IMG/VR virus record: IMGVR_UViG_3300001460_000004
Coordinates: 1-64,000 of that record
Direction: 5' to 3' (one strand)
Length of the DNA stretch: 64,000 nucleotides
The notes beneath the pieces are model-generated. The model saw only the letters and a list, made by a program, of their open reading frames with translations. It was not told the origin of the DNA and made no database searches. Below, piece after piece: positions 300 through 49,227 of this stretch (within the stretch, counting starts at the first letter, position 1; the number at the start of each line of letters is the position of its first letter). The position numbers and the translations under genes are program-made.

Positions 300-809
300 T
301 TGATGACTGTTATTATAGATAAAGCAAGATACTTTGCAACTGCGGCACACGCCGCAGTTGGACAAGTAAGAAAATATGATGGTGCACCTTACATTGTTCA
401 CCCTCAGAGAGTTGCTGATACTGTTAAGCAATATGGTGGCACTGAACAAATGATTGCCGCTGCATACTTGCATGATGTTGTAGAGGACACAAATGTTGAT
501 ATGGATACTATCACTGGCATGTTCGGCAGTGTTGTTGCAAGTCTTGTTAAAGACCTTACAGATGTCAGTGTTGCTAGTGATGGTAACAGAGAAGCACGTA
601 AAGCCATTGACAGGCAACATACCGCAGACGCTAGTGCCGATGCACAGTTCATAAAATGTGCAGACATTATTGACAACGCTGCAGACATTGCTGATAACGA
701 TCCTAGCTTCTGGAAAGTTTATCAAAGAGAAATGTCACTATTGTTGGATGAAATGGTCCGTGTTAAAGGTACTGACATATACATGAAAGCATTGGCAAAT
801 ATTGGTTGA
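300..809 (+). CDS. HD-domain small alarmone hydrolase (Mesh1/SpoT-hydrolase-like)
   Basis: RKYDGAPYIVHP, AAYLHDVVEDT, LTD and KCADIIDN match RSH hydrolase motifs; no synthetase domain. Confidence 0.85.
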   Translation: MMTVIIDKARYFATAAHAAVGQVRKYDGAPYIVHPQRVADTVKQYGGTEQMIAAAYLHDVVEDTNVDMDTITGMFGSVVASLVKDLTDVSVASDGNREARKAIDRQHTADASADAQFIKCADIIDNAADIADNDPSFWKVYQREMSLLLDEMVRVKGTDIYMKALANIG

Positions 810-5807: not shown

Positions 5808-5897
5808 GGACAGTTGGCTGAGAGGTTTAAAGCACCGGTTTACTAAACCGACGAAGGTTAACGCCTTCCCAGGGTTCGAATCCCTGACTGTCCGCCA
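5808..5897 (+). tRNA. trnS: tRNA-Ser with anticodon ACT
   Basis: GGACAGT/ACTGTCC acceptor, G73, CCA; long variable arm GAAGG/CCTTC; anticodon loop TTACTAA. Confidence 0.85.
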
Positions 5898-6986: not shown

Positions 6987-7559
6987 ATGAATCAAACATT
7001 TATTCCTAAACGGTGGGAAAAGGAAGAGTATCAATCACGAGCTCACACTGTTTTTGAACAAGTTGATTCGTATCTTTCTACTCCCCCCAAACGTATACTT
7101 GATATTGGCTGTGGGTATGCATATATTAGTCAGCAGTTTCAAAAAAAGTATGGGACTGAGCTGTGGCTACTTGAAGGTGACTTTAATGCAACCAATGACC
7201 GCGAACGCAAAGCTAGTTGGGGTGATGTTGATACTATGAAGTTCTATTTGCCGGTTAAACAGTTAAAGAAATACTGGGACGATCAAAACATTTTGTATAA
7301 TTTTGTAGATGCTAACAATATACATATTAACAATAATTTAACATTTGATTTTGTTTGCAGTTGGTTAAGTTGCGGATATCATTATCCAGTTGCCACATAC
7401 CAATCATTAATTAAAAAACACACTAACAGTTCTAGTGTTATTATTATGGATATTAGAACAAAAACATTAAACAAGCAACAAAGTATAGAAGTTGTAAAGA
7501 AATTAGATCACGACAGTGGTAAAAGAAGTCGTTTACATTATAAATTTAAAACAAACTAG
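6987..7559 (+). CDS. class I SAM-dependent methyltransferase
   Basis: ILDIGCG motif I; FDFVCSW..C GYHY. Confidence 0.85.
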   Translation: MNQTFIPKRWEKEEYQSRAHTVFEQVDSYLSTPPKRILDIGCGYAYISQQFQKKYGTELWLLEGDFNATNDRERKASWGDVDTMKFYLPVKQLKKYWDDQNILYNFVDANNIHINNNLTFDFVCSWLSCGYHYPVATYQSLIKKHTNSSSVIIMDIRTKTLNKQQSIEVVKKLDHDSGKRSRLHYKFKTN

Positions 7560-8766
7560 TTAATTCAGGCAAGAAATCTTGTATGTTACACTTTTTCATT
7601 TTGTCCTGTAATACTATATTTTTCAAAGCTCTTTTAAACAACAGCTCGTCTTGAAATGAATGATTGTCTAAATGCATACGTATAGTTGCACTATCTGTAC
7701 ATGATAATATTGTTTGTTTTATATCTTCCCTTAATGCTCTTGCACTAAAATAATCAGGAGAATATACTGGATTTTCCAAAAATGGAATACTGTGATCATT
7801 AAACCATTGAGCTGTTTGTTCATGATACAAAATATTTAAGTTACTAATTGTATAACTTGCACTTACCATTATACCTTTATCTTGTGCAATTTTAATATTA
7901 TCAACTGTTTGATCCCAACTTAATGGATATCGCATGTATTCAAAAACTTTGCCAGTACCATCCATACTAAAACAAAAGTTTAAATTTGAAAATTGATCAA
8001 GTATGTGTTGTTGTTTTGTTGTTGGCACAAAAGATCCATTTGTTACAAAACTTATACAACACTCAGTGTTGCCAGCGGAAATTAGTTTGCGTAGTATATC
8101 CCAATTGGTTCTAATCATTGTAGGTTCGCCACCAGTAAATCCAATAAACTTTGCAGTTTTATAGTCAATGTCAATACTATCGTGATATTCTTTAACTAAG
8201 TTTACTTCGGGTATATTGGTATTGTTGTATGCGTTCTCTAGTTTTCCCCATCCACTACTACTACCTTTATTGCATGTAACACATGTAGCATTACAAAAAT
8301 TTCCAGCATCAATCTTATAATGAGTAATTACACTTTTACCAGTTTCAGCAATACGATACAATTCTAATAAATCAGTATTGGTGTAATAATCAAGTGTTGA
8401 ATTTTTAATCTGCCTATCGCTCATACGCCCAGCATCTTCTAAGCGCCAACATGCACTACACTGGTTATTTCGTTTGTTTTTTAACAAGTCTTGTTGTATT
8501 GATTCGATATCATACCCAGTTGGCAACTGACAGCAATGTACATCAGCAGGATATTCTCTACCATAAAATGGTAATACACAAAAATTTGTAATGTTGTCTA
8601 ATTGTTGCTGGTGCGATCCTAACATTTGATCTATTTCTTTAGCAACAAATGGTTCAAGATTAATACCAGATGCAAAATCTTTGTATGCAGGCCAATCCTC
8701 GCCAGACATTGCAACATAATCATTTTCGTTTATATTTTGATAGCGAGGTTTTTGTTTTACTTGCAT
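7546..8766 (-). CDS. radical SAM enzyme with N-terminal twitch/SPASM-like Cys cluster
   Basis: FCVLPF..CC..CSACW, CNATCVTC, GGEP, TNG, SMDG..YMRYP. Confidence 0.9.
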   Translation of the reverse strand: MQVKQKPRYQNINENDYVAMSGEDWPAYKDFASGINLEPFVAKEIDQMLGSHQQQLDNITNFCVLPFYGREYPADVHCCQLPTGYDIESIQQDLLKNKRNNQCSACWRLEDAGRMSDRQIKNSTLDYYTNTDLLELYRIAETGKSVITHYKIDAGNFCNATCVTCNKGSSSGWGKLENAYNNTNIPEVNLVKEYHDSIDIDYKTAKFIGFTGGEPTMIRTNWDILRKLISAGNTECCISFVTNGSFVPTTKQQHILDQFSNLNFCFSMDGTGKVFEYMRYPLSWDQTVDNIKIAQDKGIMVSASYTISNLNILYHEQTAQWFNDHSIPFLENPVYSPDYFSARALREDIKQTILSCTDSATIRMHLDNHSFQDELLFKRALKNIVLQDKMKKCNIQDFLPELTSLF

Positions 8767-9774: not shown

Positions 9775-10194
9775 ATGTCACAAGTAGACTTAAACAAGTA
9801 CAAAGATTTTGTAAAAGAAGTAACCAGCGACGAATCACTATCAAGTATGCAGATGTATAATCGTATTATTGAAATTGAAACAACTGAAAGTGCTGCAAAA
9901 GTAAACATGGCGCAACTAATGACTGGTGCTATTGGCATTAGTGCAGAAGGTGGCGAGTTTATGGAAATTGTAAAGAAGTGTGTATTCCAAGGCAAGCCCA
10001 TGGACAAAGATACACAGTATCATGCCATGCGTGAACTTGGTGACATCATGTGGTACTGGATGAACAGTTGCAGTGCATTGGGCATTGATCCCAATGATGT
10101 CATTGCAGAGAATGTTAAAAAACTTGAGAAACGTTACCCAGGCGGAAGTTTTGATCCATACTATTCAGAAAACAGAAAAGAAGGCGATATCTAA
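9775..10194 (+). CDS. mazG: MazG-like NTP pyrophosphohydrolase
   Basis: EGGEFMEIVKK, ELGDIMWY, NVKKLEKRYP. Confidence 0.9.
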   Translation: MSQVDLNKYKDFVKEVTSDESLSSMQMYNRIIEIETTESAAKVNMAQLMTGAIGISAEGGEFMEIVKKCVFQGKPMDKDTQYHAMRELGDIMWYWMNSCSALGIDPNDVIAENVKKLEKRYPGGSFDPYYSENRKEGDI

Positions 10195-10844: not shown

Positions 10845-13340
10845 TTAATTCCTCTCATATTGTTGTCTCACCATGTTGTAATGAGTTTCATCACTTGCAC
10901 CATTAAAAAATCGGGCTGAAGGATTGTCAAACACACGTTGATCTCCATAGATGTCTTTAGGTGCATAAAAGCTATTGTCTAGCATTTGCGGTTGTTGGTA
11001 TTGTCTTATTTTAGGATTATATCCTAACAAAGCAGCTCTTTCATCTTCTCCGGTATCACCTGCAAGTGCTGCTTCTACTAAATTATCCTCTAAATTTTGT
11101 TGCAATGCCAGTTGTTCTTCACTAACTTCGTTTAAATTATCTGAAATTGATTCATCTATTTGATTTTGTAGCACTTTATTAATTAGCGAGTTTAATTCTG
11201 TATTCAATGCTGCTACTACATCAAAAGTCAATACAGCATCATTTGTTGTTATTTCAGCAGTGTAACTACTAGGTGATCCATAATCAATTGTGCTAATGCC
11301 ACTGTTTAAATTATTTTCGCCTAACAATAATGATTCTGATTCACCTGATATCAGTTCAATATTGTCCCCAGATGCTTGTAAATTTGTTTGACCTGTTATG
11401 GTAAAATTGCTGTTGTTTGTATTAGATTGTTGCGATTGGGTTCCATCGCTGCTGTTATTTGAACTGTAGGATGTATCGTTTGATGTACTTCCATTATCGA
11501 TACTCGCACCACTAGAATTTTGCATATTATTGCTGTTACTATTGCTTACTTGAAAATTTCCACGGTTAGCATTGTTGTTGTTACCACTGGTTGCTAAACT
11601 ACTAGCAGCATTATCTTGTGCTATATTTTCAGCAACTCGGGCAACAGTTGCTGCCGCTGATAATGTCCTTCGTTGTTTTGAGCTTAATGTTGGTTTAGGT
11701 TCTTCAACTATTTCTGCAACTTCTTCCACATCAACATCGTCAACACTTGCTATATCAACTGATACTTCTTCAGCAATCTCTTCAACGGGTTCCTCTTTTA
11801 ATACTTTGGCAGTGTCTAATTCTTGAATTACCTCTACAGTTTCAGCTAATAATACTTCTTGTTCAATTATAACTTGTTCTTCGTTTAACTGTGTAGCGTT
11901 TTTAGGACCTGCATCCTGTACGGCTATTTCTTGTGGCAATGGTTCAGGATCATTGAGCTCAACACCAGTTGTTTGTTCAATATCAACACCAGAACTTTGT
12001 TCAATATCAACACCGGTTGTTGCTTGTACATCAATACCTTCGTTTAACTGTTCGGTAATTACGGATATTGGTTGTTGTTGCTGTTCCCTTTGTTCTATTG
12101 TTGTATCAAGTTGTGTGATGTCAACTGTGGTTAAATCAACAGTGTTGATATCAGCAACAATATCTCCAGTTGTCAAGTCAGGATTGGTATTCATATCAAT
12201 TGGATCAGTTATAACTACTATGGTACCTGCAGACTGATCTTCGGATAACCCAGTAGGCACAGTAGTATCAAAAATATCACTACCATCATTTGCAGTTTGT
12301 CCATCATCACTACCACTGGTTATAGTAGTATCGAGTCCTTGATTTTCTTCACTGATAATAACGTCAGTTTGTGTAGCAATTAACACAGTACCTTCATTAT
12401 TAACACTTAACGCAGAACCGCTACTGTCGGTGCTGTTTCCATTGCTACCACTTGTATCAAGTCCAGCTAATCCTTCATTTAATGCATCTGACATTGTGGT
12501 TGTGTTATCAAATGTTTCAGTGTTTTCACCGTTGTTAGCTGTTTGTGTACCATCATCGCTACCGGTTTCAGTGCCATCATCGTATTCATAACCAGGACAT
12601 GTTGGATTAAACTGCGGATCAATTTGACATTGTTGATCAAATTCACTTGTATTACCACTTGTATCTGGCGCTGTTTGTCCTGGATATAGATAATTAGGAT
12701 CAAAAGTATCAGTTGTTTCGGTTGTTCTGTAAACCATAATAAATTCTAAATCACCAATACCATCACCGGCAGTATCACCAGTCATAGTTGCTATTATTTC
12801 ATAGGTGTCTAACGAATTAACTCTATAAGGTGGTGGATTATCAATACTGTCTTGGTATCCATCTAATTCATTATAATTGGTATAATCTACTGAAGCACTA
12901 TAAATTGTACTGTTACCGTCTTTAATTTCCATCTTAAACATTAATTCAGCATTCGCACTTTTGTATACTTTGTATTCGTATTTCCAGCCTCTAATTTCTA
13001 AACCCAATCCGGCTTGCTGAAATGCTGCATTGAGTGCAATGGTGGCTTTGGCAAATTGTGTGGCGTATGGATCATCGTTGATAAATCTATATGAATTTGT
13101 GTTTGCATCGTAGTAAGCGGTGTCTTCGGTTAAATCAACGGCATCGGCACCATCTAGCATATTCATAGTGACAGTATTACACAGTATGTCATCAGTAAAA
13201 GTGGCTTGCCCATAGCCTGGAGCCAAATAGTCACCAGCGTAGTAACTTGCACCACAACTGTGAGTAGCAGTTTGTGCTAATGCATTAGAGCAATAAAAGG
13301 AGCAAACCAACACCGCCAACAGCTTTGAGGATTGTTGCAT
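10845..13340 (-). CDS. large secreted acidic low-complexity protein
   Basis: Signal peptide; CQIDPQFNPTCPGY motif; D/E/T/N/S-rich tracts. Confidence 0.75.
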   Translation of the reverse strand: MQQSSKLLAVLVCSFYCSNALAQTATHSCGASYYAGDYLAPGYGQATFTDDILCNTVTMNMLDGADAVDLTEDTAYYDANTNSYRFINDDPYATQFAKATIALNAAFQQAGLGLEIRGWKYEYKVYKSANAELMFKMEIKDGNSTIYSASVDYTNYNELDGYQDSIDNPPPYRVNSLDTYEIIATMTGDTAGDGIGDLEFIMVYRTTETTDTFDPNYLYPGQTAPDTSGNTSEFDQQCQIDPQFNPTCPGYEYDDGTETGSDDGTQTANNGENTETFDNTTTMSDALNEGLAGLDTSGSNGNSTDSSGSALSVNNEGTVLIATQTDVIISEENQGLDTTITSGSDDGQTANDGSDIFDTTVPTGLSEDQSAGTIVVITDPIDMNTNPDLTTGDIVADINTVDLTTVDITQLDTTIEQREQQQQPISVITEQLNEGIDVQATTGVDIEQSSGVDIEQTTGVELNDPEPLPQEIAVQDAGPKNATQLNEEQVIIEQEVLLAETVEVIQELDTAKVLKEEPVEEIAEEVSVDIASVDDVDVEEVAEIVEEPKPTLSSKQRRTLSAAATVARVAENIAQDNAASSLATSGNNNNANRGNFQVSNSNSNNMQNSSGASIDNGSTSNDTSYSSNNSSDGTQSQQSNTNNSNFTITGQTNLQASGDNIELISGESESLLLGENNLNSGISTIDYGSPSSYTAEITTNDAVLTFDVVAALNTELNSLINKVLQNQIDESISDNLNEVSEEQLALQQNLEDNLVEAALAGDTGEDERAALLGYNPKIRQYQQPQMLDNSFYAPKDIYGDQRVFDNPSARFFNGASDETHYNMVRQQYERN

Positions 13341-14439
13341 TATTATCTTCCTTTTCGGTTACTATTGCTTTATCGCTGGGATGTACAATAGGTTCCGGTT
13401 CTCCTTCTTTAACACCGTCCCATTCTTCTGTAGCTTCTTCGCCAATTTTACCTTTAAACGGACAAGGTGTACCAGCCATCATCATTGCATCAAAAATACG
13501 TTTGTCTTGACACATCAATGCAATAGCTGCAACTTTCATTCCCATATTGTACAGTGTTTTTGATTGCTTTAGCATTTCACAATTCATATCTCTTACATGA
13601 GATCCTGCGGCAATACCTACAATTTGTGTTTGTACTGACCCAGTAACACTGGTTGTACATGTATCATTGCCGCCTGCGTTTACTGTAGGTGCAATAGCAC
13701 TTGGGGGAGGTGCAATAATTGTTTGTTCCTGCTTTACATTGCTGTTGTTATTATTGTTATTAGTATTTTCAGCAGTGCTGTTAACTGTAGTATTGTTGGT
13801 ATTTTGGTTTGTGTTAGTATTTGTATTGGTGTTTACATTAGTGTTATTGCTAGTACTGTTTACTGTTTGGTCAACTGTACTTGTACTAGTACTGTTTACT
13901 GTTTGGTCAACTGTACTTGTGCTAGTGTTAACATTAGTATTGTTATTAGTGTTTGTGTTGGTTGTACCACCACTTAATATGTTATTATTGGTATTTGTGT
14001 TTGTGTTCGTACTGGTACCGGTGTAATTTGTAGTGTTATTATTTGTATTAGAATTTGTATTGGTGTTTACATTAGTGTTATTGTTGGTATTGGTACTAGT
14101 GCTTGTGTTTGTATTGGTGTTGTTGTTTGTATTGGTATTGTTGTTTGTATTGGTATTGGTTGTACCACCACTTAATATGTTATTATTGGTATTTGTGTTA
14201 GTGTTAGTGTTTGTATTGTTATTAGTGTTTGTGTTGGTACTGTTAATAGTAGTGTTATTAGTGTTGGTATTTGTACCTGTGGTAGTGACTGCACTAGTTG
14301 TTGAAGTAGTGCTATCAGTTAATACACAATCAATGCCGGTTGTTGCACAGTCTGATGTGTTAACAACTTGTGCTGACGTAGGATTTGTGTACAAAACAGC
14401 TATAAGAAAAACAGTAAAATAGGTTAGTTTAATATTCAT
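13285..14439 (-). CDS. secreted Thr/Asn-repeat protein with Cys-containing C-terminal domain and C-terminal hydrophobic tail
   Basis: Signal peptide; (TN)n repeats; PPPSAIAP..C..C..MCQD..GTPCP; GGAG RBS supports a start at 14439. Confidence 0.8.
   Translation of the reverse strand: MNIKLTYFTVFLIAVLYTNPTSAQVVNTSDCATTGIDCVLTDSTTSTTSAVTTTGTNTNTNNTTINSTNTNTNNNTNTNTNTNTNNNILSGGTTNTNTNNNTNTNNNTNTNTSTSTNTNNNTNVNTNTNSNTNNNTTNYTGTSTNTNTNTNNNILSGGTTNTNTNNNTNVNTSTSTVDQTVNSTSTSTVDQTVNSTSNNTNVNTNTNTNTNQNTNNTTVNSTAENTNNNNNNSNVKQEQTIIAPPPSAIAPTVNAGGNDTCTTSVTGSVQTQIVGIAAGSHVRDMNCEMLKQSKTLYNMGMKVAAIALMCQDKRIFDAMMMAGTPCPFKGKIGEEATEEWDGVKEGEPEPIVHPSDKAIVTEKEDNNATILKAVGGVGLLLLLL
13735..14310 (-). repeat. coding low-complexity repeats (TNTNTNNN; NILSGGTT x2; STSTVDQTVN x2)
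   Basis: Direct repeats visible in DNA and protein. Confidence 0.9.
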
Positions 14440-14458
14440 TAAAGTCGAGCTCCACAAT

Positions 14459-14584: not shown

Positions 14585-14613
14585 TTGACATTGCACGTTA
14601 AACGTGTTATATT
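14585..14613 (+). promoter_or_regulatory. sigma70-type promoter
   Basis: TTGACA-N17-TATATT with extended TG. Confidence 0.75.
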
Positions 14614-14638
14614 CAAAGTATTAGCAAAGGAAATCATA

Positions 14639-14875
14639 ATGTCAAATGTCACTCATAATAATTTAATTAACGCTGTTGGAAATGCATACGATGCAGCTAT
14701 TTTATTAGCAAAACGAACACGTGATTTAAAAAATGGGTCAAATTCTTTACTTGAATACACAGAATTTGATACTCATCGGATTGTGGCTACACGTGAAATT
14801 GAACAGGGTATTATTACTATGCAATATTTTTACGAACAGAATAACAGTGACCTACTCGAAGATGAAATGTTTTAA
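14639..14875 (+). CDS. rpoZ: RNA polymerase omega subunit homolog
   Basis: VT....NAVGNAYDAAILLAKRTRDL..G....A.REIEQG aligns with the omega pattern (VT.....GNRFDLVLVAARRARQ..G..ALREIEEG); AGGA RBS. Confidence 0.7.
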   Translation: MSNVTHNNLINAVGNAYDAAILLAKRTRDLKNGSNSLLEYTEFDTHRIVATREIEQGIITMQYFYEQNNSDLLEDEMF

Positions 14876-14952: not shown

Positions 14953-15174
14953 ATGGTTGTTGCCAAAAGCATGGAAAGATTAACGAATGAAGATTTAAAG
15001 TATCTCGAAGTATTACTTGGTAGGGAATTTGCAACTGAAAGCGATAGATGTAAATCTTGGCAACAAAAAAACAAATACGACAAGCCTTTTGGAAAACAAA
15101 ATCAAATATTAAATTGTTTAAATGCAATTAGAGATTGCCGAAGAGTTAAAGAAATGCTGGACGCCAAATGGTAA
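14953..15174 (+). CDS. hypothetical protein
   Basis: AAGGA RBS; TAAATA upstream. Confidence 0.55.
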   Translation: MVVAKSMERLTNEDLKYLEVLLGREFATESDRCKSWQQKNKYDKPFGKQNQILNCLNAIRDCRRVKEMLDAKW

Positions 15175-15193
15175 AAACTACAAAAAATTTTTC

Positions 15194-15224
15194 TTGACAT
15201 CTTGAACAATTTATGTTATAAATA
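15194..15224 (+). promoter_or_regulatory. overlapping sigma70 and late promoter for the tmRNA
   Basis: TTGACA(15194)-N17-TATAAATA(15217-15224). Confidence 0.75.
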
Positions 15225-15228
15225 ACAT

Positions 15229-15540
15229 TGTAACGTTGAAGCAATTCAAACGCTATACAGGACTCGGGGGCAGTACCCGACGCCTCCACCATAAACACAT
15301 CTAGACTGGTTTTTATATCTGATCAGATAGATGCATTGACAACTTAGGTGTGTTTATGATGGGGGCGAACTAGGATCGACTGGTGGTTAATAGAGTTAGT
15401 GGAGTTATCCGGATCTAAGCACGGTTATCGCGAAGAAAACTTATAATTGCAAATGACAATTATGCGCCAGCAATGGCAATTGCAGCCTAATTAGGTATGC
15501 GGGGTATGGGTTCCACCTAGCAACAGAACGGGCCTGCTAC
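15229..15540 (+). ncRNA. ssrA: two-piece (circularly permuted) tmRNA, alphaproteobacterial type; tag ANDNYAPAMAIAA
   Basis: Acceptor piece ends CGCCTCCACCA (15291) with T-arm GGGGCAGTACCC; intervening hairpin ATAAACACATCTA/TAGGTGTGTTTAT; coding piece starts GGGGGCGAA (15361) giving G3.U70; tag ORF 15449-15490. Outer ends approximate. Confidence 0.93.
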
Positions 15541-15561
15541 AATTTTACACACCGTAAACGG

Positions 15562-15590
15562 TTGACTTTCCACCTTTTCTATGCTATATA
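15562..15590 (+). promoter_or_regulatory. sigma70-type promoter
   Basis: TTGACT-N17-TATATA with extended TG. Confidence 0.6.
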
Positions 15591-16841: not shown

Positions 16842-17285
16842 ATGAATAAATCAATATTAATAGTTATGATTGTAACATTTTTTGCTACTATGTTTGTACA
16901 AGCTGCGAATGCAGAAGATATAACTATTGAAATGCTTAACAAGCGTGATGACGGTGCTAAAATGGTATTCAGTGAAGATATTGCAAGAATTGACGTTGGT
17001 GATACTATTACATGGGTACCAACTGCAAAAGGACACAATGTACATTTTACTGCGGGTCCGGACGGATGGGATATTCCTAAGAAGTCAAAGAACAACAAAG
17101 AAGTTGAAATTACATTTGACACACCTGGCGTATACTTTTATCAGTGTACACCACACAAAGGCATGGGCATGATTGCTCTTGTTGTTGTAGGAGACGACAC
17201 ATCAAATGCAGATACAATTATGAAAGCAAGCAAAGCCAAAGGCAAAAGCAAAAAGAAACTTAAAGGATTACTTGAAGAACTATGA
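16842..17285 (+). CDS. pseudoazurin (type I blue copper protein)
   Basis: Signal peptide; MLNK...MVF...GDTITW...GHN; CTPHKGMGM copper ligands. Confidence 0.92.
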   Translation: MNKSILIVMIVTFFATMFVQAANAEDITIEMLNKRDDGAKMVFSEDIARIDVGDTITWVPTAKGHNVHFTAGPDGWDIPKKSKNNKEVEITFDTPGVYFYQCTPHKGMGMIALVVVGDDTSNADTIMKASKAKGKSKKKLKGLLEEL

Positions 17286-23977: not shown

Positions 23978-25075
23978 ATGTCAGAGACAAGAACAGTAAC
24001 GGCGTTAACAGCAACAAATGCAATTCAAAAGTGCTTTGCTAAAAAACGCCCTGTGTTTTTATGGGGTCCTCCCGGTATTGGTAAAAGTGAGATAGTCGAA
24101 AGCATTATCGCTAAAATGGGCGGTTTAATGATTGACTTACGTTTGGGTCAAATGGATCCAACTGATATACGAGGTATTCCTTTTTACAATAAAGAGAAAG
24201 GTGTTATGGACTGGGCACCACCTGTAGAGCTACCAAGTGAAGAACTTGCATCCCAGTTTCCCATTGTGGCTGTATTCTTTGATGAAATGAACAGTAGTGC
24301 TCCTGCTGTACAAGCTGCATCGTACCAGTTAATACTTAATCGTCGAATTGGACAATACAAATTACCCGATAATGTAGTAATGATTGCAGCTGGTAATAGA
24401 GAAAGTGACAAAGGTGTTACATATCGTATGCCTACTCCGCTTGCTAACCGTTTCGTACATTTAGAAATGCGTCCTGATTTTAATTGCTGGTTAGATTGGG
24501 CTGTACAAAACAACGAACACAAAGACGTTGTAGGTTATTTGCAATTTGCAAAACAAGACTTATATGATTTTGATCCTAAAAGCTCAAGTCGTTCTTTTGC
24601 TACACCACGTACTTGGAGTTTTGTAAGTGAACTTATTGAAGATGATGACGGTACTGATCCAAGTGGATTAACAGATCTTATTGCTGGTACGATTGGTGAA
24701 GGACTTGCTATTAAGTTTATGGCACATCGTAAGTTTGCAGGTGATCTACCAAATCCTGAGGATATCTTAGATGGTTCTGTAAAAGAACTTAAAGTAAAAG
24801 AGATCAGTGCAATGTACAGTTTAGTTGTTAGCTTGTGTTACGAGCTAAAAGCAAGTCTCGAAGATGACAGTGTTAATGATAAAAAATGGCACGAGTATGT
24901 TGATAACTTCTTTGCTTATATGATGGACAATTTTGAAACTGAAATTGTTGTTATGGGTGCAAGGATTGCATTAACTACATACGAACTACCAATGCAACCA
25001 ACTAAACTTAAAAACTTTGATCGGTTATATGAAAAATATGGCAAATATATTGTTAAGTCCAACCAGGCCGCTTAA
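23978..25075 (+). CDS. MoxR-like AAA+ ATPase
   Basis: GPPGIGKS, FFDEMN, AAGNR, LANRF, TPRTW. Confidence 0.92.
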   Translation: MSETRTVTALTATNAIQKCFAKKRPVFLWGPPGIGKSEIVESIIAKMGGLMIDLRLGQMDPTDIRGIPFYNKEKGVMDWAPPVELPSEELASQFPIVAVFFDEMNSSAPAVQAASYQLILNRRIGQYKLPDNVVMIAAGNRESDKGVTYRMPTPLANRFVHLEMRPDFNCWLDWAVQNNEHKDVVGYLQFAKQDLYDFDPKSSSRSFATPRTWSFVSELIEDDDGTDPSGLTDLIAGTIGEGLAIKFMAHRKFAGDLPNPEDILDGSVKELKVKEISAMYSLVVSLCYELKASLEDDSVNDKKWHEYVDNFFAYMMDNFETEIVVMGARIALTTYELPMQPTKLKNFDRLYEKYGKYIVKSNQAA

Positions 25076-25334
25076 TCGAGAGGGTCAACTAAATCGTGCA
25101 ATGCAGAATCCTGAAGGAGCTGTGTTGCACACTCGTAGTTTTGACCATAACGATCAACAAAATCTAACAAGAATGATTAAAGATCTCTGTATAGAATTTG
25201 GAAGACCAAATACTGAAGACTGGGGTTTTTATTGTTTGTATGCAGGTGATGAAGTTAACTTAAAAATATGGTTCAATGATCCAAGGCTGGCTATGATGTA
25301 TGTGTTAAAGTTTGGAAATTCTAATCTTCAATGA
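25017..25334 (+). CDS. hypothetical protein (start uncertain)
   Basis: ORF between the AAA and vWA genes. Confidence 0.5.
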   Translation: MIGYMKNMANILLSPTRPLNREGQLNRAMQNPEGAVLHTRSFDHNDQQNLTRMIKDLCIEFGRPNTEDWGFYCLYAGDEVNLKIWFNDPRLAMMYVLKFGNSNLQ

Positions 25335-25687
25335 AATACGAAATACAAAAACTTGATGGTAGATTTACATTCAAACGTCATTTTGATTATGCAATTGCGT
25401 TTGAAAACAGAATGGCACATGATAAAGGTCCATTGTATTGGGCTAAATGTCATGCATGGTTAACCGAAACATATGGCCCAAGTTTAGAAATGAGCATATG
25501 GAATGAAATTAAAACTTGGGATGAAATGCGATACATGGTTAGCCTTGGGCCGGACCCAGAGGTTGCAGAACTATGTAATCCTGATTGGGCTTGGAGCATA
25601 GCAGTTCCAGCAAAAATACGTATATATCTAAAAAATCATGAAGTTTTGACATGGTTTTCTTTGAAGTTTAGTCAGAATATTGATTAA
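25331..25687 (+). CDS. hypothetical protein
   Basis: Coupled ORF. Confidence 0.6.
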   Translation: MKYEIQKLDGRFTFKRHFDYAIAFENRMAHDKGPLYWAKCHAWLTETYGPSLEMSIWNEIKTWDEMRYMVSLGPDPEVAELCNPDWAWSIAVPAKIRIYLKNHEVLTWFSLKFSQNID

Positions 25688-25693
25688 ATATGG

Positions 25694-25722
25694 TTGACAA
25701 TACATATTCATTGTGCTATAAT
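25694..25722 (+). promoter_or_regulatory. consensus sigma70 promoter
   Basis: TTGACA-N17-TATAAT with extended TG. Confidence 0.85.
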
Positions 25723-25753
25723 ATATGTATAAATTAGAAAAGAGGATATAGGA

Positions 25754-27031
25754 ATGAGTCTAGAAACTGATGCTAAATCTAATAATAAACCTCTTAAATA
25801 TCTACTAGGTGATACTGACCCTAAACTTGATGCAGAAATGCGTGAAAAACTTATTACAGCACGAGTTGGGTTGTTGCTAAACAATCAATTTTTTGGTAAC
25901 TTGGCTACACGACTTAAATTAGTAAATGCCGATAAGTGGTGTACTACTGCCGCAACTGATGGGAGACATTTTTATTACAACAGTCGATTCATTGAAATGT
26001 TGTCTCAAAAAGAAGTTGAATTTTTGTTTGGGCACGAAGTATTGCATGTAGCATATGATCATTTTGGTCGTAAAGGTGAACGAGATCACCAACTTTGGAA
26101 TGTTGCTTGCGACTATGCTGTAAATGGAGATCTCAAGTGGCACAAGGTAGGACAATTTATTACAACAGTNCCGGCATTGTATGATCCTAAATACAAAGAT
26201 ATTGCAAGCGAAGAAATATATGATGAACTGTACGAAAATGCAGAAAAAATTAATATTGATGATTTAATTGACAAACTATTAGATGAACACATTGATGCCG
26301 ATGATGCAAATGAAGAAGGTGCAGGACCTGGTGAAGAAGGACACGATACTAGTAAGCCAATTCCGTTAACCAAAGAACAAAAAGAACAAATTAAAGATGA
26401 AATGAAAGAAGCATTAATTAATGCGGCTAGTACAAGTGAAGCTGGAAAAGTACCAGCTGGCATACAACGTATTATTAAAGATCTCACTGAGCCTCAAATG
26501 GACTTTAGAGAATTGTTGCAAATGAATATTCAAAGTTTAATTAAAAATGATTTTACATTTGCAAAAGTAAGTCGCAAAGGTTGGCATTTTGATGCAGTAC
26601 TACCTGGTATGAACAACGACGAAGCAATTGATATTGCAATTGGATTGGATCTAAGTGGTAGTATTACTAACGAAATGGGCCGAGATATGATAAGTGAAAT
26701 ATACGGCATTACACAACAATTTGGTACATTTAAAATACATTTGTTTACATTTGACACAGAAGTATATAACTATCAAGTTTTTGATAGTGACAGTGGTCAA
26801 GATATTAGCGAATACGAACTTAAAGGAGGTGGCGGCACTTCATATGAATGCATATTTAACTTCCTTAAAGAAGAGGGCATTGAACCTCAAAAATTAGTAG
26901 TGTTTACAGATGGATATCCGTGGAATACATGGGGTGATCCAAACTACTGCGAAACATTATGGATTATACATAGCAACCCTAATCCAGAACCAGAGTTTGG
27001 TGATTGGGTTCCATATCAACTAGCGGCATGA
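25754..27031 (+). CDS. zincin metallopeptidase plus vWA domain protein (DUF2201-like)
   Basis: TAATDG, HEVLH, WNVACD; MIDAS DLSGS, GGGGT, FTDG. Confidence 0.9.
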   Translation: MSLETDAKSNNKPLKYLLGDTDPKLDAEMREKLITARVGLLLNNQFFGNLATRLKLVNADKWCTTAATDGRHFYYNSRFIEMLSQKEVEFLFGHEVLHVAYDHFGRKGERDHQLWNVACDYAVNGDLKWHKVGQFITTXPALYDPKYKDIASEEIYDELYENAEKINIDDLIDKLLDEHIDADDANEEGAGPGEEGHDTSKPIPLTKEQKEQIKDEMKEALINAASTSEAGKVPAGIQRIIKDLTEPQMDFRELLQMNIQSLIKNDFTFAKVSRKGWHFDAVLPGMNNDEAIDIAIGLDLSGSITNEMGRDMISEIYGITQQFGTFKIHLFTFDTEVYNYQVFDSDSGQDISEYELKGGGGTSYECIFNFLKEEGIEPQKLVVFTDGYPWNTWGDPNYCETLWIIHSNPNPEPEFGDWVPYQLAA

Positions 27032-28297: not shown

Positions 28298-29308
28298 ATG
28301 AGTGAAGATAGAGACGTTATTCCTACAGTTTTAGTAACAGGTGGATTAGGGTTAATTGGGCATCATGTTGTAAGTCAACTTGAAGAACAAGGCTATGATG
28401 TAGTTGTTACTGACACTAAGACCAACTACAACGGACTTATACCTAATGACGAACTCAACTATTTGATTGGCGAGCGTTCAAAGAAAATAAGAACGCAAGA
28501 AATATACAATGTTGATATTTGCGACTCTGGTCGTATGGAAGCTATTTTTAACAAATATCGTCCCGAAACAATTGTGCATTTAGCAAGTTTTCCAAGACAA
28601 AAAGTAGTAAATGCTAATCCTCAAAGTGGTAGTAGAACTATGAGTGAAGGATTACTTAACTTATTGGAACTTAGTGCCAAGTATAGTAGCAAACGATTTG
28701 TTTACATAAGCAGTAGTATGGTTTATGGTAGTTTTGAAGATGATGTTAAAGAAGATGCCGCAATGAATCCACAAGGACAATACGGTATTATGAAACTAGC
28801 TGGTGAATGGTTAGTTAAAGATTACACACGTAAATGTGGTATTGAGCATGTTATTATTCGCCCAAGTGCAGTTTATGGTCCTTTGGATGTACAAGATCGA
28901 GTTGTAAGTAAGTTTATGATCTCGGCAATGCAAGGCAAAGAGCTTAGTGTAAACGGTAAAAGTGAAACATTAGATTTTACGTATGTAACAGATGCAGCCG
29001 ACGGTGTTGTTGCAGCAGCAACTATTCCGCAAGCAGCCAACAATACATATAACATTACCAAAAGTCATAGTTGGACATTATATGATGCAGCCGAGTTAGC
29101 TGTAAAAATTGCTGGTAACGGAACAATAAATGTAAAAGACAAAGATATGGATTTTCCCAGCCGAGGTGCGTTAAATATTGATTCGGCTAGAGCTGATTTA
29201 GGATTTGACCCTAAAGTTGACTTAGAAGAAGGGTTTGAACGCTACTATGAATGGTTTAAAGATTCCGTTTACTGGTCTGAAAAAGCAGTACCTCAATCTC
29301 AAGACTGA
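28298..29308 (+). CDS. NAD-dependent NDP-sugar epimerase/dehydratase (extended SDR)
   Basis: VTGGLGLIG, SSSMVYG, YGIMK, RPSAVYGP, DFTYV. Confidence 0.93.
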   Translation: MSEDRDVIPTVLVTGGLGLIGHHVVSQLEEQGYDVVVTDTKTNYNGLIPNDELNYLIGERSKKIRTQEIYNVDICDSGRMEAIFNKYRPETIVHLASFPRQKVVNANPQSGSRTMSEGLLNLLELSAKYSSKRFVYISSSMVYGSFEDDVKEDAAMNPQGQYGIMKLAGEWLVKDYTRKCGIEHVIIRPSAVYGPLDVQDRVVSKFMISAMQGKELSVNGKSETLDFTYVTDAADGVVAAATIPQAANNTYNITKSHSWTLYDAAELAVKIAGNGTINVKDKDMDFPSRGALNIDSARADLGFDPKVDLEEGFERYYEWFKDSVYWSEKAVPQSQD

Positions 29309-36504: not shown

Positions 36505-38010
36505 TTATGTAAAAACCTTAACGCCATACATTGTAGCAAATTCTTGAGCATCTGTTAAGTCATTTACTATGGGTTTGCCTTTAATATTTAAACTTGTGTT
36601 CAGTAACATTGGGCATCCTGTTTTTCGGTGCCACGCTTCGAGTAGTCTTCGTATGCCACTGCCGTCTGGAGCAACTGTTTGTACTCTACTTGTTCCGTCT
36701 GCGTGACAGATTGCAGGATACAAGTCTGGATGCTTACAGGTTGAGGTATACTGCATATAGTTGTTGTAGTATCCTTCAAAGTTATCACTTGCATATTCTT
36801 CTAGTATAACTGGAGCAAAAGGTCTAAATTCTTGTCTTCGTTTAATTCTGTTGACTCTGTCTTTGATGTCATGGCCACGAGGATCAGCAAGCAAACTACG
36901 ATTACCAAAAGCCCGCGGGCCAAACTCTGCTTTGCCGTTAGCAACTCCGCAGATGCCAGTCTCGGCAAGTTCCTTGACTGTTTGTAAAACTGGGTATTCT
37001 CCTTTTATGTCATATCCTAAAAATGCATGATCCATCTTCATGTGTTGTTTTTTATGTGCTAACACTGCTCCTACTGCACTGCCAGCATCACCAGGATTAG
37101 GCATAATCCATACTCGATCAAAGTAATCATATGCTATGCTATTAGCACTGCAATTTAATGCACATCCTCCCATTAAAACTAAGTTTTTACTGTCTACATT
37201 TCGTTGCATCCATATCAATGCTTTTCTAAACATATCTTCATACAGTTTTTGCGTTGCTGCGGCAATATCAAACATATCTTGTTCTGTATCAAGATCAGGA
37301 CGCCAGCGTTGACATCCTCTATGTAAATTTTCCCAAAACAGTGTAGCCGGTTCTTCGATATAAAATCTAGTAGCAACAGTACTAATCAGATCCCATCCTT
37401 CAACAACAAAATGTTCTTTTATATCATTGTATAATCTATTAGGATCGCCATACGCCGCCATACCCATAAGAATGTATTCATCTTCGTTTGGTTTTAATCC
37501 TATACGTTGAGTCATTGCACTGTACCAAAGTCCTATGCTGTGTGGATAACCTTGTGTGTAAACACGTTTTAGTTCCGTGTCTTTGGCTTCCCAGACTGTA
37601 AAGGTTTCAAATTCGCCAATGCTGTCAATACATATGACTGTAGCATCTCTAAAGTTACTAGTATAATAACCAGCGGCAGCATGACTAAGATGATGATCAA
37701 CACACTTAATAGGAGCATCGAGTTTGTAGCTTTTAAGATAACTTTTAATATTGTTTTCATTATACCTCCAACCCTGGCCTGCCCAAAGCTGTCTCAGTGT
37801 TTTTTTAAAAGGACGTTCATACCAAATGATTTCATCCGGTTCTCCCCATTGTTTAGCATAATCAATCAACGCTGTGTTTAAATGTGCATCATTCTTAACA
37901 CCGCTGAAACGTTCGCTGTGACTAGCAAATTCTAATCCGTCGTTGTTGAATACTGCTAGTGCAGCATCGTGGCTGTTGGCACTAATGCCCCAAGTTATTT
38001 TACTATGCAT
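36505..38010 (-). CDS. O-carbamoyltransferase (NodU/CmcH/TobZ family)
   Basis: HDAA, HHLSHAA, GGCALN, GDAGSAVG, EFGPRAFGNRS, RPFAP, LNTSLN. Confidence 0.95.
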   Translation of the reverse strand: MHSKITWGISANSHDAALAVFNNDGLEFASHSERFSGVKNDAHLNTALIDYAKQWGEPDEIIWYERPFKKTLRQLWAGQGWRYNENNIKSYLKSYKLDAPIKCVDHHLSHAAAGYYTSNFRDATVICIDSIGEFETFTVWEAKDTELKRVYTQGYPHSIGLWYSAMTQRIGLKPNEDEYILMGMAAYGDPNRLYNDIKEHFVVEGWDLISTVATRFYIEEPATLFWENLHRGCQRWRPDLDTEQDMFDIAAATQKLYEDMFRKALIWMQRNVDSKNLVLMGGCALNCSANSIAYDYFDRVWIMPNPGDAGSAVGAVLAHKKQHMKMDHAFLGYDIKGEYPVLQTVKELAETGICGVANGKAEFGPRAFGNRSLLADPRGHDIKDRVNRIKRRQEFRPFAPVILEEYASDNFEGYYNNYMQYTSTCKHPDLYPAICHADGTSRVQTVAPDGSGIRRLLEAWHRKTGCPMLLNTSLNIKGKPIVNDLTDAQEFATMYGVKVFT

Positions 38011-38883: not shown

Positions 38884-39068
38884 TTGTAAATAAACGGATC
38901 TCTTTTACGTAACTGTTTTAGTTTTTTTCGATATGCAATATCAGATTTAATTTGTTGATATTGCTTTTTAATCCACTTAAACATTGATCGCTCCTTTCTG
39001 TCTGTTTTGTTTTTTTGAACAGTTTGTTCATAGTTCATTCGATCTTGCCTTTGTCGAGCTGTGGCCAT
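38880..39068 (-). CDS. small basic protein
   Basis: Coupled on both sides; ends RKKLKQLRKRDPFIYK. Confidence 0.6.
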   Translation of the reverse strand: MATARQRQDRMNYEQTVQKNKTDRKERSMFKWIKKQYQQIKSDIAYRKKLKQLRKRDPFIYK

Positions 39069-48220: not shown

Positions 48221-49227
48221 TCTAAGTAGTTGTGGTTAGCACGTTGAGGAAAATAATTACTTTTTCCACCGTCTCTTTCAATATCTAATGTTAAACAATG
48301 CATACCTCCATCCCAAAAACCTTTGTGTGTAAAGTTACATTGTAGCACATTTATACCCAACTTGTCAAGGAATTCTAACAGCCTCGGGTTAGTGCTTATG
48401 CTCAATACTGTGTTGTTGTTAAGTACTAACATGTTAACACTAAACTGGGTTTCTTTATAATTGCCTACCCAATTCTGTGCATGTTTTTGTATGTGTTCTG
48501 CAAATTTGCCATTACCATTTACATTAGAATTTACCCACCATTCCCCAAAATGATCGTTACGGGCAGGCATCTCTTCTGGCATATGAAACACTTGCCAATT
48601 TGGAAAACTTTCTTTGTAATCTTGTTTCCAATGTGTTGTAACTATTACTCCTGGGGCAACTGGACAAAAAACACCATCGCTGTGTCCGCCAGTGCGTATC
48701 ATGTGTACTCGGTAATCCTGTGCCCACTTCAAAAACTCTATACTTACTTGCGGCATAACATGTTCATGACTTTCAGCATCAACAAAAATATCCTTGCCAA
48801 CACGTACAACACTAGGACCGCACAAACAGTTGTTATCTTCACCTGGCCTAGTTACAATTATTTCTCCTTCTAATTCTCTTAATGCATATTCCCAAGGATC
48901 TTTGTAACTTTCATCTAATTGATGATACAATGTATTTCCTAACACAAGTCCTCTATCACGTGGCATAATAGGTGGCTTAACAAGATATCCACTTGTATCA
49001 CAGTGCTGCCCTCTATTAACGCTATTAAAACTTGGACGAGTAACTTTTACCCCGTGTTCAACGAGTATTTTTTCAATGTTTTTTAAATCATTTTTTGTAG
49101 TTTCGGTTATTTCAATAAATGCTTCTGCTACATCTGGATTGTACTCACTGTAAAACTCTATAGGATATACATCTCCTAACCATACATGTTTTAATTGGTC
49201 CCATCCAGTGTGACTATTGATTTGCAT
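48208..49227 (-). CDS. amidinotransferase, second paralog
   Basis: WDQLKHVWLG, PRD, GGHSDG, WDGGMHCLT. Confidence 0.87.
   Translation of the reverse strand: MQINSHTGWDQLKHVWLGDVYPIEFYSEYNPDVAEAFIEITETTKNDLKNIEKILVEHGVKVTRPSFNSVNRGQHCDTSGYLVKPPIMPRDRGLVLGNTLYHQLDESYKDPWEYALRELEGEIIVTRPGEDNNCLCGPSVVRVGKDIFVDAESHEHVMPQVSIEFLKWAQDYRVHMIRTGGHSDGVFCPVAPGVIVTTHWKQDYKESFPNWQVFHMPEEMPARNDHFGEWWVNSNVNGNGKFAEHIQKHAQNWVGNYKETQFSVNMLVLNNNTVLSISTNPRLLEFLDKLGINVLQCNFTHKGFWDGGMHCLTLDIERDGGKSNYFPQRANHNYLDWLK

What the first reader, a model, noticed from the sequence alone, without database searches (positions are those of the whole stretch)
14639..14875. Phage RNA polymerase omega homolog lacking the ppGpp site-1 MAR motif
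Seen: the omega signature, behind its own strong sigma70 promoter, with N-terminus MSNVT instead of MARVT. Known: in proteobacteria the omega N-terminal residues form ppGpp site 1 with beta'. Inference: a decoy omega that swaps into host RNAP and blunts ppGpp control, or retunes sigma preference toward phage promoters.
Basis: partly seen in the sequence, partly recalled or inferred. Interest (0 to 1): 0.75.

Follow-up and report, generated by a model that had tools for sequence, protein, structure and literature searches.

The report
Jumbo-phage RNA polymerase omega subunit
A large uncultured marine phage carries its own copy of omega, the smallest subunit of bacterial RNA polymerase; the gene proves to be shared by a whole clade of uncultured ~350-kb phages, and this copy has uniquely lost the two residues that help the host enzyme sense the starvation signal ppGpp.

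Summary
Window 14639-14875(+) encodes a 78-aa protein that passes the curated cut-offs of Pfam RNA_pol_Rpb6 and TIGR00690 rpoZ. It aligns without gaps to E. coli/Vibrio omega (MSNVT against MARVT) and models as the omega fold. It sits behind a TTGACA-17-TGnTATATT promoter.

The record is a genuine jumbo myophage (portal, sheath, TerL). No beta, beta' or sigma70-region-2 Pfam match was found in it; beta' and sigma70 were also absent from five near-complete relatives.

The gene is not a one-off:
- A profile scan of IMG/VR found 144 viral contigs with omega homologs.
- 79 of the 80 fetched are viral-type.
- 69 of the 80 lie within about 6 kb of three or more tRNA genes, and 12 lie near a two-piece tmRNA.
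- The closest relatives (TerL 77%) keep the order omega, tmRNA, gene-20871 homolog.

Most viral omegas keep Arg3 (43 of 52) and Arg16 (51 of 52). The window's copy lacks both and is only about 32% identical to viral and cellular omegas alike.

Cultured phages, PHROGs and the papers searched show no phage omega.

The "ppGpp-blind decoy" reading is therefore only partly supported. The contact residues are gone, but binding, exchange and ppGpp response are untested, and the family as a whole keeps the motif.

The parts
14585..14613 (+). Sigma70-type promoter: -35 TTGACA (14585-14590), 17-nt spacer, extended -10 TGtTATATT (TG 14605-14606, hexamer 14608-14613)
   Evidence: 11 of 12 matches, TG present. 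It is one of 44 such near-consensus sites in the 230-kb record, against 15.5 +/- 2.3 in Markov-1 simulations; 16 of the 44 lie in the 5.8% of the genome that is non-coding.
14594..14606 (.). Perfect palindrome CACGT-TAA-ACGTG inside the promoter spacer; possible operator (inference only)
   Evidence: the only match in the window; 0 of 100 shuffles had any match.
14627..14631 (+). Shine-Dalgarno AAGGA; the GGA lies 7 nt before the ATG
   Evidence: Read directly from the sequence.
14639..14875 (+). Phage rpoZ-like gene: 78-aa RNA polymerase omega homolog with Ser2-Asn3 in place of Ala2-Arg3, Ala16 in place of the near-invariant Arg16, and an acidic C-terminal helix
14953..15174 (+). 73-aa ORF of unknown function, probably co-transcribed with omega because no terminator lies between them
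   Evidence: intergenic fold z-score -0.59. No Pfam or PHROG match. The Atlas neighbours are viral hypothetical proteins.
15190..15581 (+). Two-piece (permuted) alpha-type tmRNA gene, tag peptide ANDNYAPAMAIAA; the conserved neighbour of omega in related phages
   Evidence: ARAGORN 15197-15581. Rfam RF01849 alpha_tmRNA 132 bits at 15190-15538, and RF04321. The omega-tmRNA linkage is seen in 12 related loci.

Best explanation
The gene encodes a phage-made omega subunit. It is the fast-diverged positional ortholog of an omega gene that a clade of uncultured ~315-365-kb jumbo myophages keeps in its tRNA/tmRNA island.

Proposed mechanism:
1. Unmodified host sigma70 holoenzyme transcribes the gene early from a near-consensus extended -10 promoter (inferred).
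2. The protein adopts the omega fold (modelled).
3. The phage has no beta' of its own, so the protein binds the host's beta' where host omega binds. It enters RNA polymerase that is newly assembled or omega-free during infection (inferred, not shown).
4. At family level the likely role is to keep host RNA polymerase assembled and stable, or to mark it, while the phage takes over gene expression. This parallels the tRNAs and tmRNA next to the gene.
5. In this phage the omega has lost Ala2-Arg3 and Arg16. Polymerase carrying it should lack the omega half of ppGpp site 1 and respond less to ppGpp through that site. The DksA-dependent site 2 would be untouched.

Whether that loss is adaptive or reflects relaxed constraint is open. 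Relaxed constraint is plausible because the phage also encodes a SpoT-like alarmone hydrolase.
For: Identity as omega.

Core residues invariant in 52 viral and 58 cellular omegas are all kept: R26, R28, E53, E55, G57; G14, N15, D18 and I54 are nearly invariant and also kept.

Phage context.

No own polymerase:
- No beta, beta' or sigma70 region 2 in the record.
- No beta' or sigma70 region 2 in five relatives that are 95-100% complete.
- The nearest cultured relative, PA5oct, is rifampicin-sensitive and has no RNAP gene (PMC7318152).

Sigma70 promoters are enriched about 3-fold and concentrated in non-coding DNA.

Family and synteny:
- 144 IMG/VR contigs carry a homolog; 79 of the 80 fetched are viral-type.
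- 69 of 80 lie beside three or more tRNAs and 12 beside a permuted tmRNA.
- L027, L093 and L104 share the window's order omega, tmRNA, 20871 homolog. L027 continues with the MoxR ATPase and DUF2201 genes, which also lie downstream of omega in L032, L040, L054 and L092.
- These records are real phages, with TerL 65-77% identical to the window phage and some with terminal repeats.

Loss of contact residues: N3 against R in 43 of 52 viral and 58 of 58 cellular omegas; A16 against R in 109 and K in 1 of the 110. Ala2 and Arg3 contact ppGpp (PMC13192712; PMC7676912).

Exchange is plausible: 17-25% of purified E. coli RNAP particles lacked omega (PMC13192712).
Against: - There is no direct evidence that the protein is made or binds any beta'. 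Metatranscriptome contigs gave essentially no cover of the gene.
- The host is unknown. An alphaproteobacterium is only inferred from the tmRNA type.
- The window omega sits on a very long branch (2.72). It is about 32% identical to viral and to cellular omegas alike, and falls outside the well-supported viral clade in the free tree.
- It lacks the near-invariant Arg16, whose role I could not establish. It might therefore bind beta' poorly or do something else.
- No sequence variants exist to test purifying selection: all 9 extra contigs compared carry an identical gene sequence.
- In E. coli, omega is dispensable and site 1 loss is mild.
Confidence: 0.55

Rival explanations
1. One reading: a decoy omega selected specifically to blunt the stringent response. 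It would out-compete host omega so that polymerase no longer senses ppGpp at site 1, acting together with the phage's SpoT-like alarmone hydrolase and MazG.
For: - Ser2-Asn3 replace Ala2-Arg3 in register.
- The MAR motif predicts site 1 (PMC6912228).
- The promoter is a strong early type.
- The same window encodes a small alarmone hydrolase homolog with the HDxxED motif (303-809) and a MazG-like pyrophosphatase (9775-10194).
- About half of the viral omegas deviate from a plain MAR N-terminus, whereas 58 of 58 cellular ones keep it.
Against: - The closest relatives keep MAR at the orthologous locus.
- 83% of viral omegas keep Arg3.
- The hydrolase does not co-vary with MAR loss. It is present in G016, which has a MAR omega, and absent from the complete genomes G012 and G013, which have Arg3-less omegas.
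- If the hydrolase removes ppGpp, a ppGpp-blind omega adds little, and loss of the motif is what relaxed constraint predicts.
- Site 2 with DksA would still act (PMC7676912).
Confidence: 0.2
2. Adaptor model: phage omega marks the polymerase and provides a docking surface for a phage-encoded activator or sigma-like factor that directs middle or late transcription. The precedent is the GTA activator GafA, which acts through direct contact with omega in Rhodobacter.
For: - Omega is a proven activator contact in Alphaproteobacteria (PMC9638019).
- The viral omegas form their own clade with distinctive surfaces: a basic C-tail and a GR(D/E)YL motif. The window copy has a different, acidic C-terminal helix.
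- A conserved 83-aa gene follows omega within about 0.5 kb in several loci (L026, L030, L033-L035, L038, L064) and lies within a few kb in many others.
- The co-transcribed 73-aa ORF in the window has no known function.
Against: - No partner has been identified.
- The 83-aa gene lies 195 kb away in this genome and has no family assignment.
- No sigma-like gene was detected.
- The idea rests purely on analogy.
Confidence: 0.15
3. Decaying or neutral passenger: the window's omega is a drifting copy that no longer works as an RNAP subunit.
For: - It has the longest branch in the tree.
- It is 26-32% identical to the omegas of phages whose TerL is 77% identical. Those two omegas are 69% identical to each other.
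- It has uniquely lost Arg3 and Arg16.
Against: - The ORF is intact, of family-typical length, with a consensus promoter and a good Shine-Dalgarno.
- All invariant core residues are kept.
- The fold is predicted with confidence.
- The identical gene was found on 20 contigs from several marine samples, with no disrupted copy among the nine compared.
Confidence: 0.08
4. Subunit of a phage-encoded multisubunit RNA polymerase.
For: Some jumbo phages, the phiKZ-like group, encode their own multisubunit polymerases (my own knowledge).
Against: - No beta or beta' Pfam domain in the record, and no beta' domain in five near-complete relatives.
- The lineage is PA5oct/Atu_ph07-like, not phiKZ-like.
- PA5oct has no RNAP gene and needs host RNAP (PMC7318152).
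- phiKZ-type enzymes are not known to have omega (my own knowledge).
Confidence: 0.02

Closest known systems
Bacterial RNA polymerase omega subunit (RpoZ; Pfam PF01192, TIGR00690), especially gammaproteobacterial E. coli and Vibrio omega
   Same: Same fold and helix layout. The alignment over residues 1-69 has no gaps and the loop length matches. All invariant core residues are kept, and Val4-Thr5 are kept.
   Different: It is encoded by a phage with no beta or beta'. Ala2-Arg3 are replaced by Ser-Asn and Arg16 by Ala. It is at most 43% identical to any cellular omega found, both in a library of 1.8 billion representative proteins (best 38-40%) and in a GTDB genome scan (best 43%). It is not next to spoT or gmk.
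The uncultured viral omega clade found here in IMG/VR (e.g. L026, L034, L093, L104)
   Same: Same genomic module (tRNA/tmRNA island) and the same gene order as in the closest relatives. Same phage lineage by TerL. Shares the aromatic-x-aromatic stretch after EIEQG (YFY against YLY/YLK).
   Different: Only about 32% identical, whereas clade members are about 55% identical to each other. Two extra loop residues. An acidic rather than basic C-tail. No Arg3 and no Arg16. It falls outside the clade in the free tree, although an AU test does not reject membership (p 0.60).
Phage proteins that reprogramme host RNA polymerase (T4 AsiA, gp55/gp33 and RpbA; T7 Gp2; Xp10 P7; Thermus phage gp39)
   Same: Small, early-expressed phage proteins that act on the host enzyme (my own knowledge; PMC3950348 for gp39).
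   Different: Those are unrelated folds that bind as accessory factors or inhibitors. This one is a homolog of a core subunit and would act by substitution.
Phage-encoded copies of host expression-machinery parts (tRNAs, tmRNA, ribosomal proteins such as bS21 in pelagiphages and huge phages)
   Same: The same logic of supplying or replacing a small, exchangeable component of the host machine, and physical linkage to tRNA and tmRNA genes (PMC7162821 for tmRNA and translation genes in huge phages).
   Different: It concerns transcription rather than translation. Omega is not mentioned in the main text of the huge-phage survey or of the 2026 jumbo-phage review.

Membership tests
RNA polymerase omega / Rpb6 family (PF01192; TIGR00690 rpoZ) | Scores above the curated profile cut-offs | tested here: met
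   PF01192 28.1 bits against 26. TIGR00690 25.6 bits against 23.6, covering 1-59 of 60 profile positions. The margins are narrow, but independent checks agree: phmmer against PDB (E 4e-8) and custom HMMs (49-52 bits).
RNA polymerase omega / Rpb6 family | Omega fold: short helix 1, long helix 2, extended loop, helix 3 | tested here: met
   AF2 model pLDDT 81 with helices 6-13, 16-31 and 46-55, plus 61-77. All top 50 Foldseek PDB hits are omega chains. Caveat: the model was built on an alignment of omegas.
RNA polymerase omega / Rpb6 family | Conserved core residues (GNR[FY]D ... R-x-R ... EIE-x-G) | tested here: inconclusive
   G14, N15, Y17, D18, R26, R28, E53, I54, E55 and G57 are kept. Arg16, which is R in 109 and K in 1 of 110 compared omegas, is Ala.
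RNA polymerase omega / Rpb6 family | Binds beta' and co-purifies with RNAP core | not testable with these tools
   No complex modelling or biochemistry was available.
ppGpp site-1-competent proteobacterial omega | N-terminal Met-Ala-Arg, with Ala2 and Arg3 contacting the ppGpp 5' diphosphate | tested here: not met
   MSN in register with MAR. The motif definition comes from PMC6912228 and the contacts from PMC13192712 and PMC7676912.
Viral omega clade of uncultured jumbo phages (defined here) | Lies in the tRNA/tmRNA island, in the order omega, tmRNA, 20871 homolog, in a phage of the same TerL lineage | tested here: met
Viral omega clade of uncultured jumbo phages (defined here) | Groups with the clade in a phylogeny | tested here: inconclusive
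   The free tree puts it outside the clade (clade support 99/99) on a 2.72 branch, next to another long branch. The constrained tree is 1.24 log-likelihood units better, AU p 0.60. The viral HMM scores 52.4 bits and the cellular HMM 49.2 bits.

The most novel reading that the evidence does not exclude
Phage omega replaces host omega on the host's beta' and makes the polymerase blind to ppGpp at site 1. Together with the phage's own SpoT-like alarmone hydrolase and MazG, this forms a multi-pronged block of the stringent response, which keeps a starving oligotrophic host transcribing phage genes. More broadly, substitution of a core RNAP subunit would be a previously unrecognised takeover strategy shared by a whole clade of jumbo phages.
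Probability: 0.2. Interest if true: 0.85.

Novelty: new variant of a known kind. Interest (0 to 1): 0.66.

Why it matters
Phages are known to retarget host RNA polymerase with sigma factors, anti-sigmas, inhibitors and covalent modification. They are not known to supply a homolog of a core subunit. I found no trace of a phage omega in these places:
- 50,697 cultured-phage records, apart from host contamination
- PHROGs
- the three nearest cultured relatives, searched at HMM sensitivity
- the papers I searched, including the huge-phage survey and a 2026 jumbo-phage review

Yet 144 IMG/VR contigs carry one, always in the same kind of tRNA/tmRNA island.

Omega's own role is still debated: assembly chaperone, ppGpp site 1, sigma competition, activator contact. 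A natural set of viral variants would help here. Some keep MAR, some have N-terminal extensions, and one lacks both Arg3 and Arg16. That is a ready-made mutational series for testing what omega does and what a phage gains by replacing it.

Tried and rejected
- Single-protein searches for close relatives found only the protein itself: the word-indexed 5.8-billion-protein search and the IMG/VR scan. Exhaustive phmmer found 11 weak hits of at most 40% identity.
- tblastn of the window omega and of a typical viral omega against cultured phages hit only host contamination or bacterial records.
- Alignment A2 was too divergent to seed a genome scan.
- Phylogeny could not place the window omega.
- No RNA run holds this DNA. 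Laying four metatranscriptomes at 80% likeness gave cover of the tmRNA and cupredoxin of relatives but essentially none of omega, so expression is untested.
- Population variation gave no usable dN/dS: all 9 extra contigs compared carry an identical gene sequence.
- I tested whether the SpoT-like hydrolase co-occurs with MAR-less omegas. It does not.
- A DksA/TraR-type zinc finger was sought in the record and not found.
- The own-RNAP hypothesis is rejected.
- No terminator lies between omega and the next ORF.
- I could not establish the host or the role of Arg16. The two structural papers on site 1 were not in the held library.

Full report
**1. What is there**

Window 14639-14875(+) is an intact 78-codon ORF (MSNVTHNNLINAVGNAYDAAILLAKRTRDLKNG...). 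It has an AAGGA Shine-Dalgarno whose GGA lies 7 nt upstream of the ATG.

It lies behind TTGACA (14585-14590), a 17-nt spacer and TGtTATATT (hexamer 14608-14613). That is 11 of 12 consensus positions plus the extended -10 TG. A 13-bp perfect palindrome, CACGTTAAACGTG, sits in the spacer and is unique in the window.

No terminator-like structure separates the gene from the next ORF, 14953-15174, 73 aa, unknown function. A second TTGACA-17-TATAAA site at 15194 precedes a two-piece tmRNA gene. Rfam alpha_tmRNA scores 132 bits at 15190-15538, and the ARAGORN tag peptide is ANDNYAPAMAIAA.

**2. It is an omega homolog**

- The protein passes the curated cut-offs of Pfam RNA_pol_Rpb6 (28.1 against 26 bits) and of the NCBIfam equivalog TIGR00690 rpoZ (25.6 against 23.6).
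- phmmer against all PDB chains finds only RNAP omega subunits. The alignment to Vibrio cholerae and E. coli omega runs from residue 1 to 69 on both sides without a gap (E 4e-8 to 6e-7). MSNVT therefore stands exactly where MARVT stands.
- An AlphaFold2 model built on a 44-sequence alignment has mean pLDDT 81 and helices at 6-13, 16-31, 46-55 and 61-77.
- The 50 best Foldseek matches in the PDB are all omega chains, TM 0.53-0.78 (0.70-0.78 for the best eight).
- The ESM Atlas feature search returns only PF01192 clusters.

**3. The genome is a jumbo phage that must use host polymerase**

The window is the first 64 kb of a 230,036-bp IMG/VR record from a marine sample, with a CheckV completeness estimate of 66%.

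The record encodes a portal, a 1133-aa tail sheath, a large terminase and ribonucleotide reductase. The terminase is 52% identical to that of Pseudomonas phage PA5oct and 49-53% identical to those of Sinorhizobium phage Phosso and Agrobacterium phage Atu_ph07.

No beta, beta' or sigma70-region-2 Pfam domain is detectable in the record. PA5oct, the nearest cultured relative, has no RNAP gene and is blocked by rifampicin (PMC7318152).

Near-consensus sigma70 sites (at least 11 of 12) number 44 in the record, against 15.5 +/- 2.3 in first-order Markov simulations. Sixteen of them fall in the 5.8% of the genome that is non-coding. The omega promoter is thus one of a family of strong host-type promoters. 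It is real-looking but not peculiar to this gene.

**4. The gene is not a singleton**

The exact protein occurs on 20 contigs from several marine data sets. It has no relative closer than 40% identity in a library of 1.8 billion representative proteins.

A profile-derived scan of IMG/VR told a different story. 144 viral contigs encode omega relatives, and 80 were fetched. One (L057) is E. coli rpoZ in host DNA. The other 79 give 52 distinct proteins of 57-93 aa with a shared look: [30 protein letters not shown] ... VTALREIEQG.(V/I)GR(D/E)YL.K, followed by a basic tail.

- In 69 of 80 loci, three or more tRNA genes (up to 29) lie within about 6 kb of omega.
- In 12 loci a permuted tmRNA does too.
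- L027, L093 and L104 show the window's order omega, tmRNA, homolog of window gene 20871. L027 continues with the MoxR-type AAA ATPase (70% identical to window 23978) and the DUF2201/VWA protein (59%). Both also lie downstream of omega in L032, L040, L054 and L092; the DUF2201 match there is 58-70% identical, in three of these loci over a partial stretch cut by the locus end.
- Six records tested have a terminase 65-77% identical to the window phage's. They are 316-364 kb long and 91-100% complete, and two have direct terminal repeats.
- Five of these near-complete genomes were searched for beta' and sigma70 region 2, and none has a match.
- One omega-bearing record (L029) has only a 35%-identical terminase, so the gene reaches beyond one lineage.

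By contrast, cultured phages have no omega:
- tblastn with the window protein and with a typical viral omega hits only bacterial DNA filed under phage names.
- PA5oct, Atu_ph07 and Phosso have no PF01192 match at E 0.1.
- No PHROG matches either query.
- I found no paper describing a phage omega. Neither the main text of the huge-phage survey nor that of a 2026 jumbo-phage review contains the word.

**5. The window's copy is the odd one out**

On a common HMM register, position 3 is Arg in 43 of 52 viral and 58 of 58 cellular (gammaproteobacterial) omegas. Position 16 is Arg in 51 of 52 viral (one Lys) and 58 of 58 cellular omegas. The window protein has Asn3 and Ala16 and is the only sequence lacking both. 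It keeps every invariant core residue: R26, R28, E53, E55 and G57, plus the nearly invariant G14, N15, D18 and I54.

Identity figures:

| Comparison | Median identity |
|---|---|
| Viral omegas with each other | 55% |
| Viral omegas with cellular omegas | 45% |
| Window protein with viral omegas | about 32% |
| Window protein with cellular omegas | about 31% |

Its nearest phage relatives by terminase (L093 and L104, 77%) have MAR omegas that are 69% identical to each other but only 26-32% identical to the window's.

In a maximum-likelihood tree the viral omegas form a clade with 99/99 support. The window protein sits outside it on a branch of 2.72 substitutions per site, next to another long branch. 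Forcing it into the viral clade gives a slightly better likelihood, and the AU test does not reject that placement (p 0.60). A viral HMM scores it 52.4 bits and a cellular HMM 49.2 bits. The cellular alignment is gapless, while the viral one needs a two-residue loop insertion.

Synteny therefore says positional ortholog, and sequence says either strongly accelerated divergence or in-place replacement by an unsampled cellular copy. I cannot tell these two apart.

**6. The ppGpp argument**

In E. coli the 5' diphosphate of ppGpp at site 1 is held mainly by omega Ala2 and Arg3 and by beta' Arg417 (PMC13192712). Residues 2-5 of omega are part of the site, and the delta-2-5 allele is the standard site 1 mutant (PMC7676912). 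The MAR motif is used to predict site 1 across Alpha-, Beta-, Gamma- and Deltaproteobacteria (PMC6912228).

The window omega cannot supply the Arg3 side chain.

The functional half meets four difficulties:
- (a) The family as a whole keeps Arg3, and half of it keeps a plain MAR. The reason phages carry omega is therefore not to destroy site 1.
- (b) Site 1 loss in E. coli is mild, because site 2 with DksA remains (PMC7676912).
- (c) The same window encodes a 168-aa SpoT/Mesh1-type HD hydrolase with the HDxxED motif. It lies at 303-809, scores PF13328 61 bits, and its PDB matches are Mesh1 and Rel/SpoT hydrolase domains. The window also encodes a MazG-like pyrophosphatase at 9775-10194. If the hydrolase removes (p)ppGpp, the omega motif would simply be freed from selection.
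- (d) Across 22 related records the hydrolase clears the Pfam cut-off only in G016, which has a MAR omega. It is absent from the complete genomes G012 and G013, whose omegas lack Arg3. There is no co-variation.

On the other side, N-terminal deviation is common in viral omegas and absent from the 58 cellular ones. The deviations are MPR, MGR, MAQ, MAK, extensions of 1-17 residues, and truncations. That suggests the N-terminus is under different or weaker constraint once the gene is in a phage.

**7. Most likely mechanism, and what is shown or inferred**

Shown:
- omega homology and fold
- phage context
- absence of detectable beta, beta' and sigma70 region 2 in the record
- a clade-wide conserved gene in the tRNA/tmRNA island
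- loss of Arg3 and Arg16 in this copy
- a host-type promoter

Inferred:
- early transcription by host holoenzyme
- binding to host beta' in the omega site
- entry into newly assembled or omega-free polymerase (17-25% of purified E. coli RNAP particles lacked omega; PMC13192712)
- a family-level role in keeping host polymerase assembled or marked during takeover
- for this copy, a polymerase without the omega half of site 1

Rivals: a purpose-built ppGpp decoy; an adaptor for a phage activator, as GafA uses omega in Rhodobacter (PMC9638019); a decaying passenger; and a subunit of a phage polymerase, which I reject.

**8. Verdict**

It points to an apparently undescribed class of phage genes: core-subunit homologs of host RNA polymerase, linked to tRNA and tmRNA islands in uncultured ~350-kb phages. 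The specific "MAR-less decoy" mechanism is possible but only weakly supported.

Noticed in passing
window 303-809 (+): A 168-aa SpoT/RelA/Mesh1-type HD hydrolase, i.e. a small alarmone hydrolase homolog with the motif LHDVVEDT. PF13328 scores 61 bits, it matches phrog_990, and the PDB matches are Mesh1 and Rel hydrolase domains. Among 22 related phage records it clears the Pfam cut-off only in G016 (G003 has a weak 19.5-bit match). It could degrade (p)ppGpp or counter toxSAS-type defence.
   Followed up: partly
window 9775-10194 (+): A MazG-like nucleotide pyrophosphatase (phrog_229, E 1e-45; PF03819), 4.5 kb upstream of omega.
   Followed up: partly
window 15190-15581 (+), and loci L026, L027, L030, L032, L034, L038, L054, L058, L083, L093, L104: A phage-borne two-piece (permuted) tmRNA. 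In the window it is alpha-type with the tag ANDNYAPAMAIAA. In relatives the tags are ANDEVYALAA, ANDSQFALAA and similar, which resemble beta- and gammaproteobacterial tags although the gene is permuted. The host range of the clade is unresolved.
   Followed up: partly
genome 210070-210321 (+) = L019:70-321; homologs e.g. L026:6473-6688, L034:6473-6688: An 83-aa protein with no Pfam or PHROG match, 45-51% identical across the clade. It lies about 250 bp downstream of omega in several related phages (L026, L030, L033-L035, L038, L064) and within a few kb in many others, but about 195 kb away from omega in this genome. It is a possible functional partner of omega.
   Followed up: partly
window 56335 to genome 70848 (-): A single ORF of 4,837 codons that runs out of the window, followed by ORFs of 1141, 931 and 906 aa on the same strand. 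Not analysed.
   Followed up: no
window 39068-49251 (-), also 7546-8766 (-): A run of paralogous radical-SAM-like genes (phrog_14086), with further copies elsewhere in the genome and in related loci (L038, L058, L100). A carbamoyltransferase (36505-38010) and a nucleotide-sugar epimerase (28298-29308) lie close by, suggesting a large modification or biosynthesis cluster.
   Followed up: no
window 16842-17285 (+): A cupredoxin gene of the plastocyanin/azurin family (PF00127, 63 bits) with a signal-peptide-like N-terminus, followed by a DoxX-like membrane protein gene. Relatives of the cupredoxin are transcribed in marine metatranscriptomes.
   Followed up: no
window 10845-14457 (-): Two secreted-looking low-complexity proteins, 831 aa and 384-390 aa. 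The second is rich in Asn-Thr repeats. They lie immediately upstream of omega on the opposite strand and have no family match.
   Followed up: no
window 23978-27031 (+): A MoxR-type AAA ATPase plus a DUF2201 metallopeptidase/VWA pair. These are the most conserved genes of the neighbourhood across the clade (the ATPase ~70% identical, the DUF2201 protein 58-70%).
   Followed up: partly
L006 and L011 (contigs carrying the identical omega gene): The 120 bp upstream of omega differ at 30 positions from the window, although the gene itself is identical. This points to a variant promoter region or a rearrangement in some populations.
   Followed up: no
window 5808-5897 (+): ARAGORN calls a tRNA-Ser with the unusual anticodon ACT. 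Rfam confirms a tRNA at this position (53 bits).
   Followed up: no
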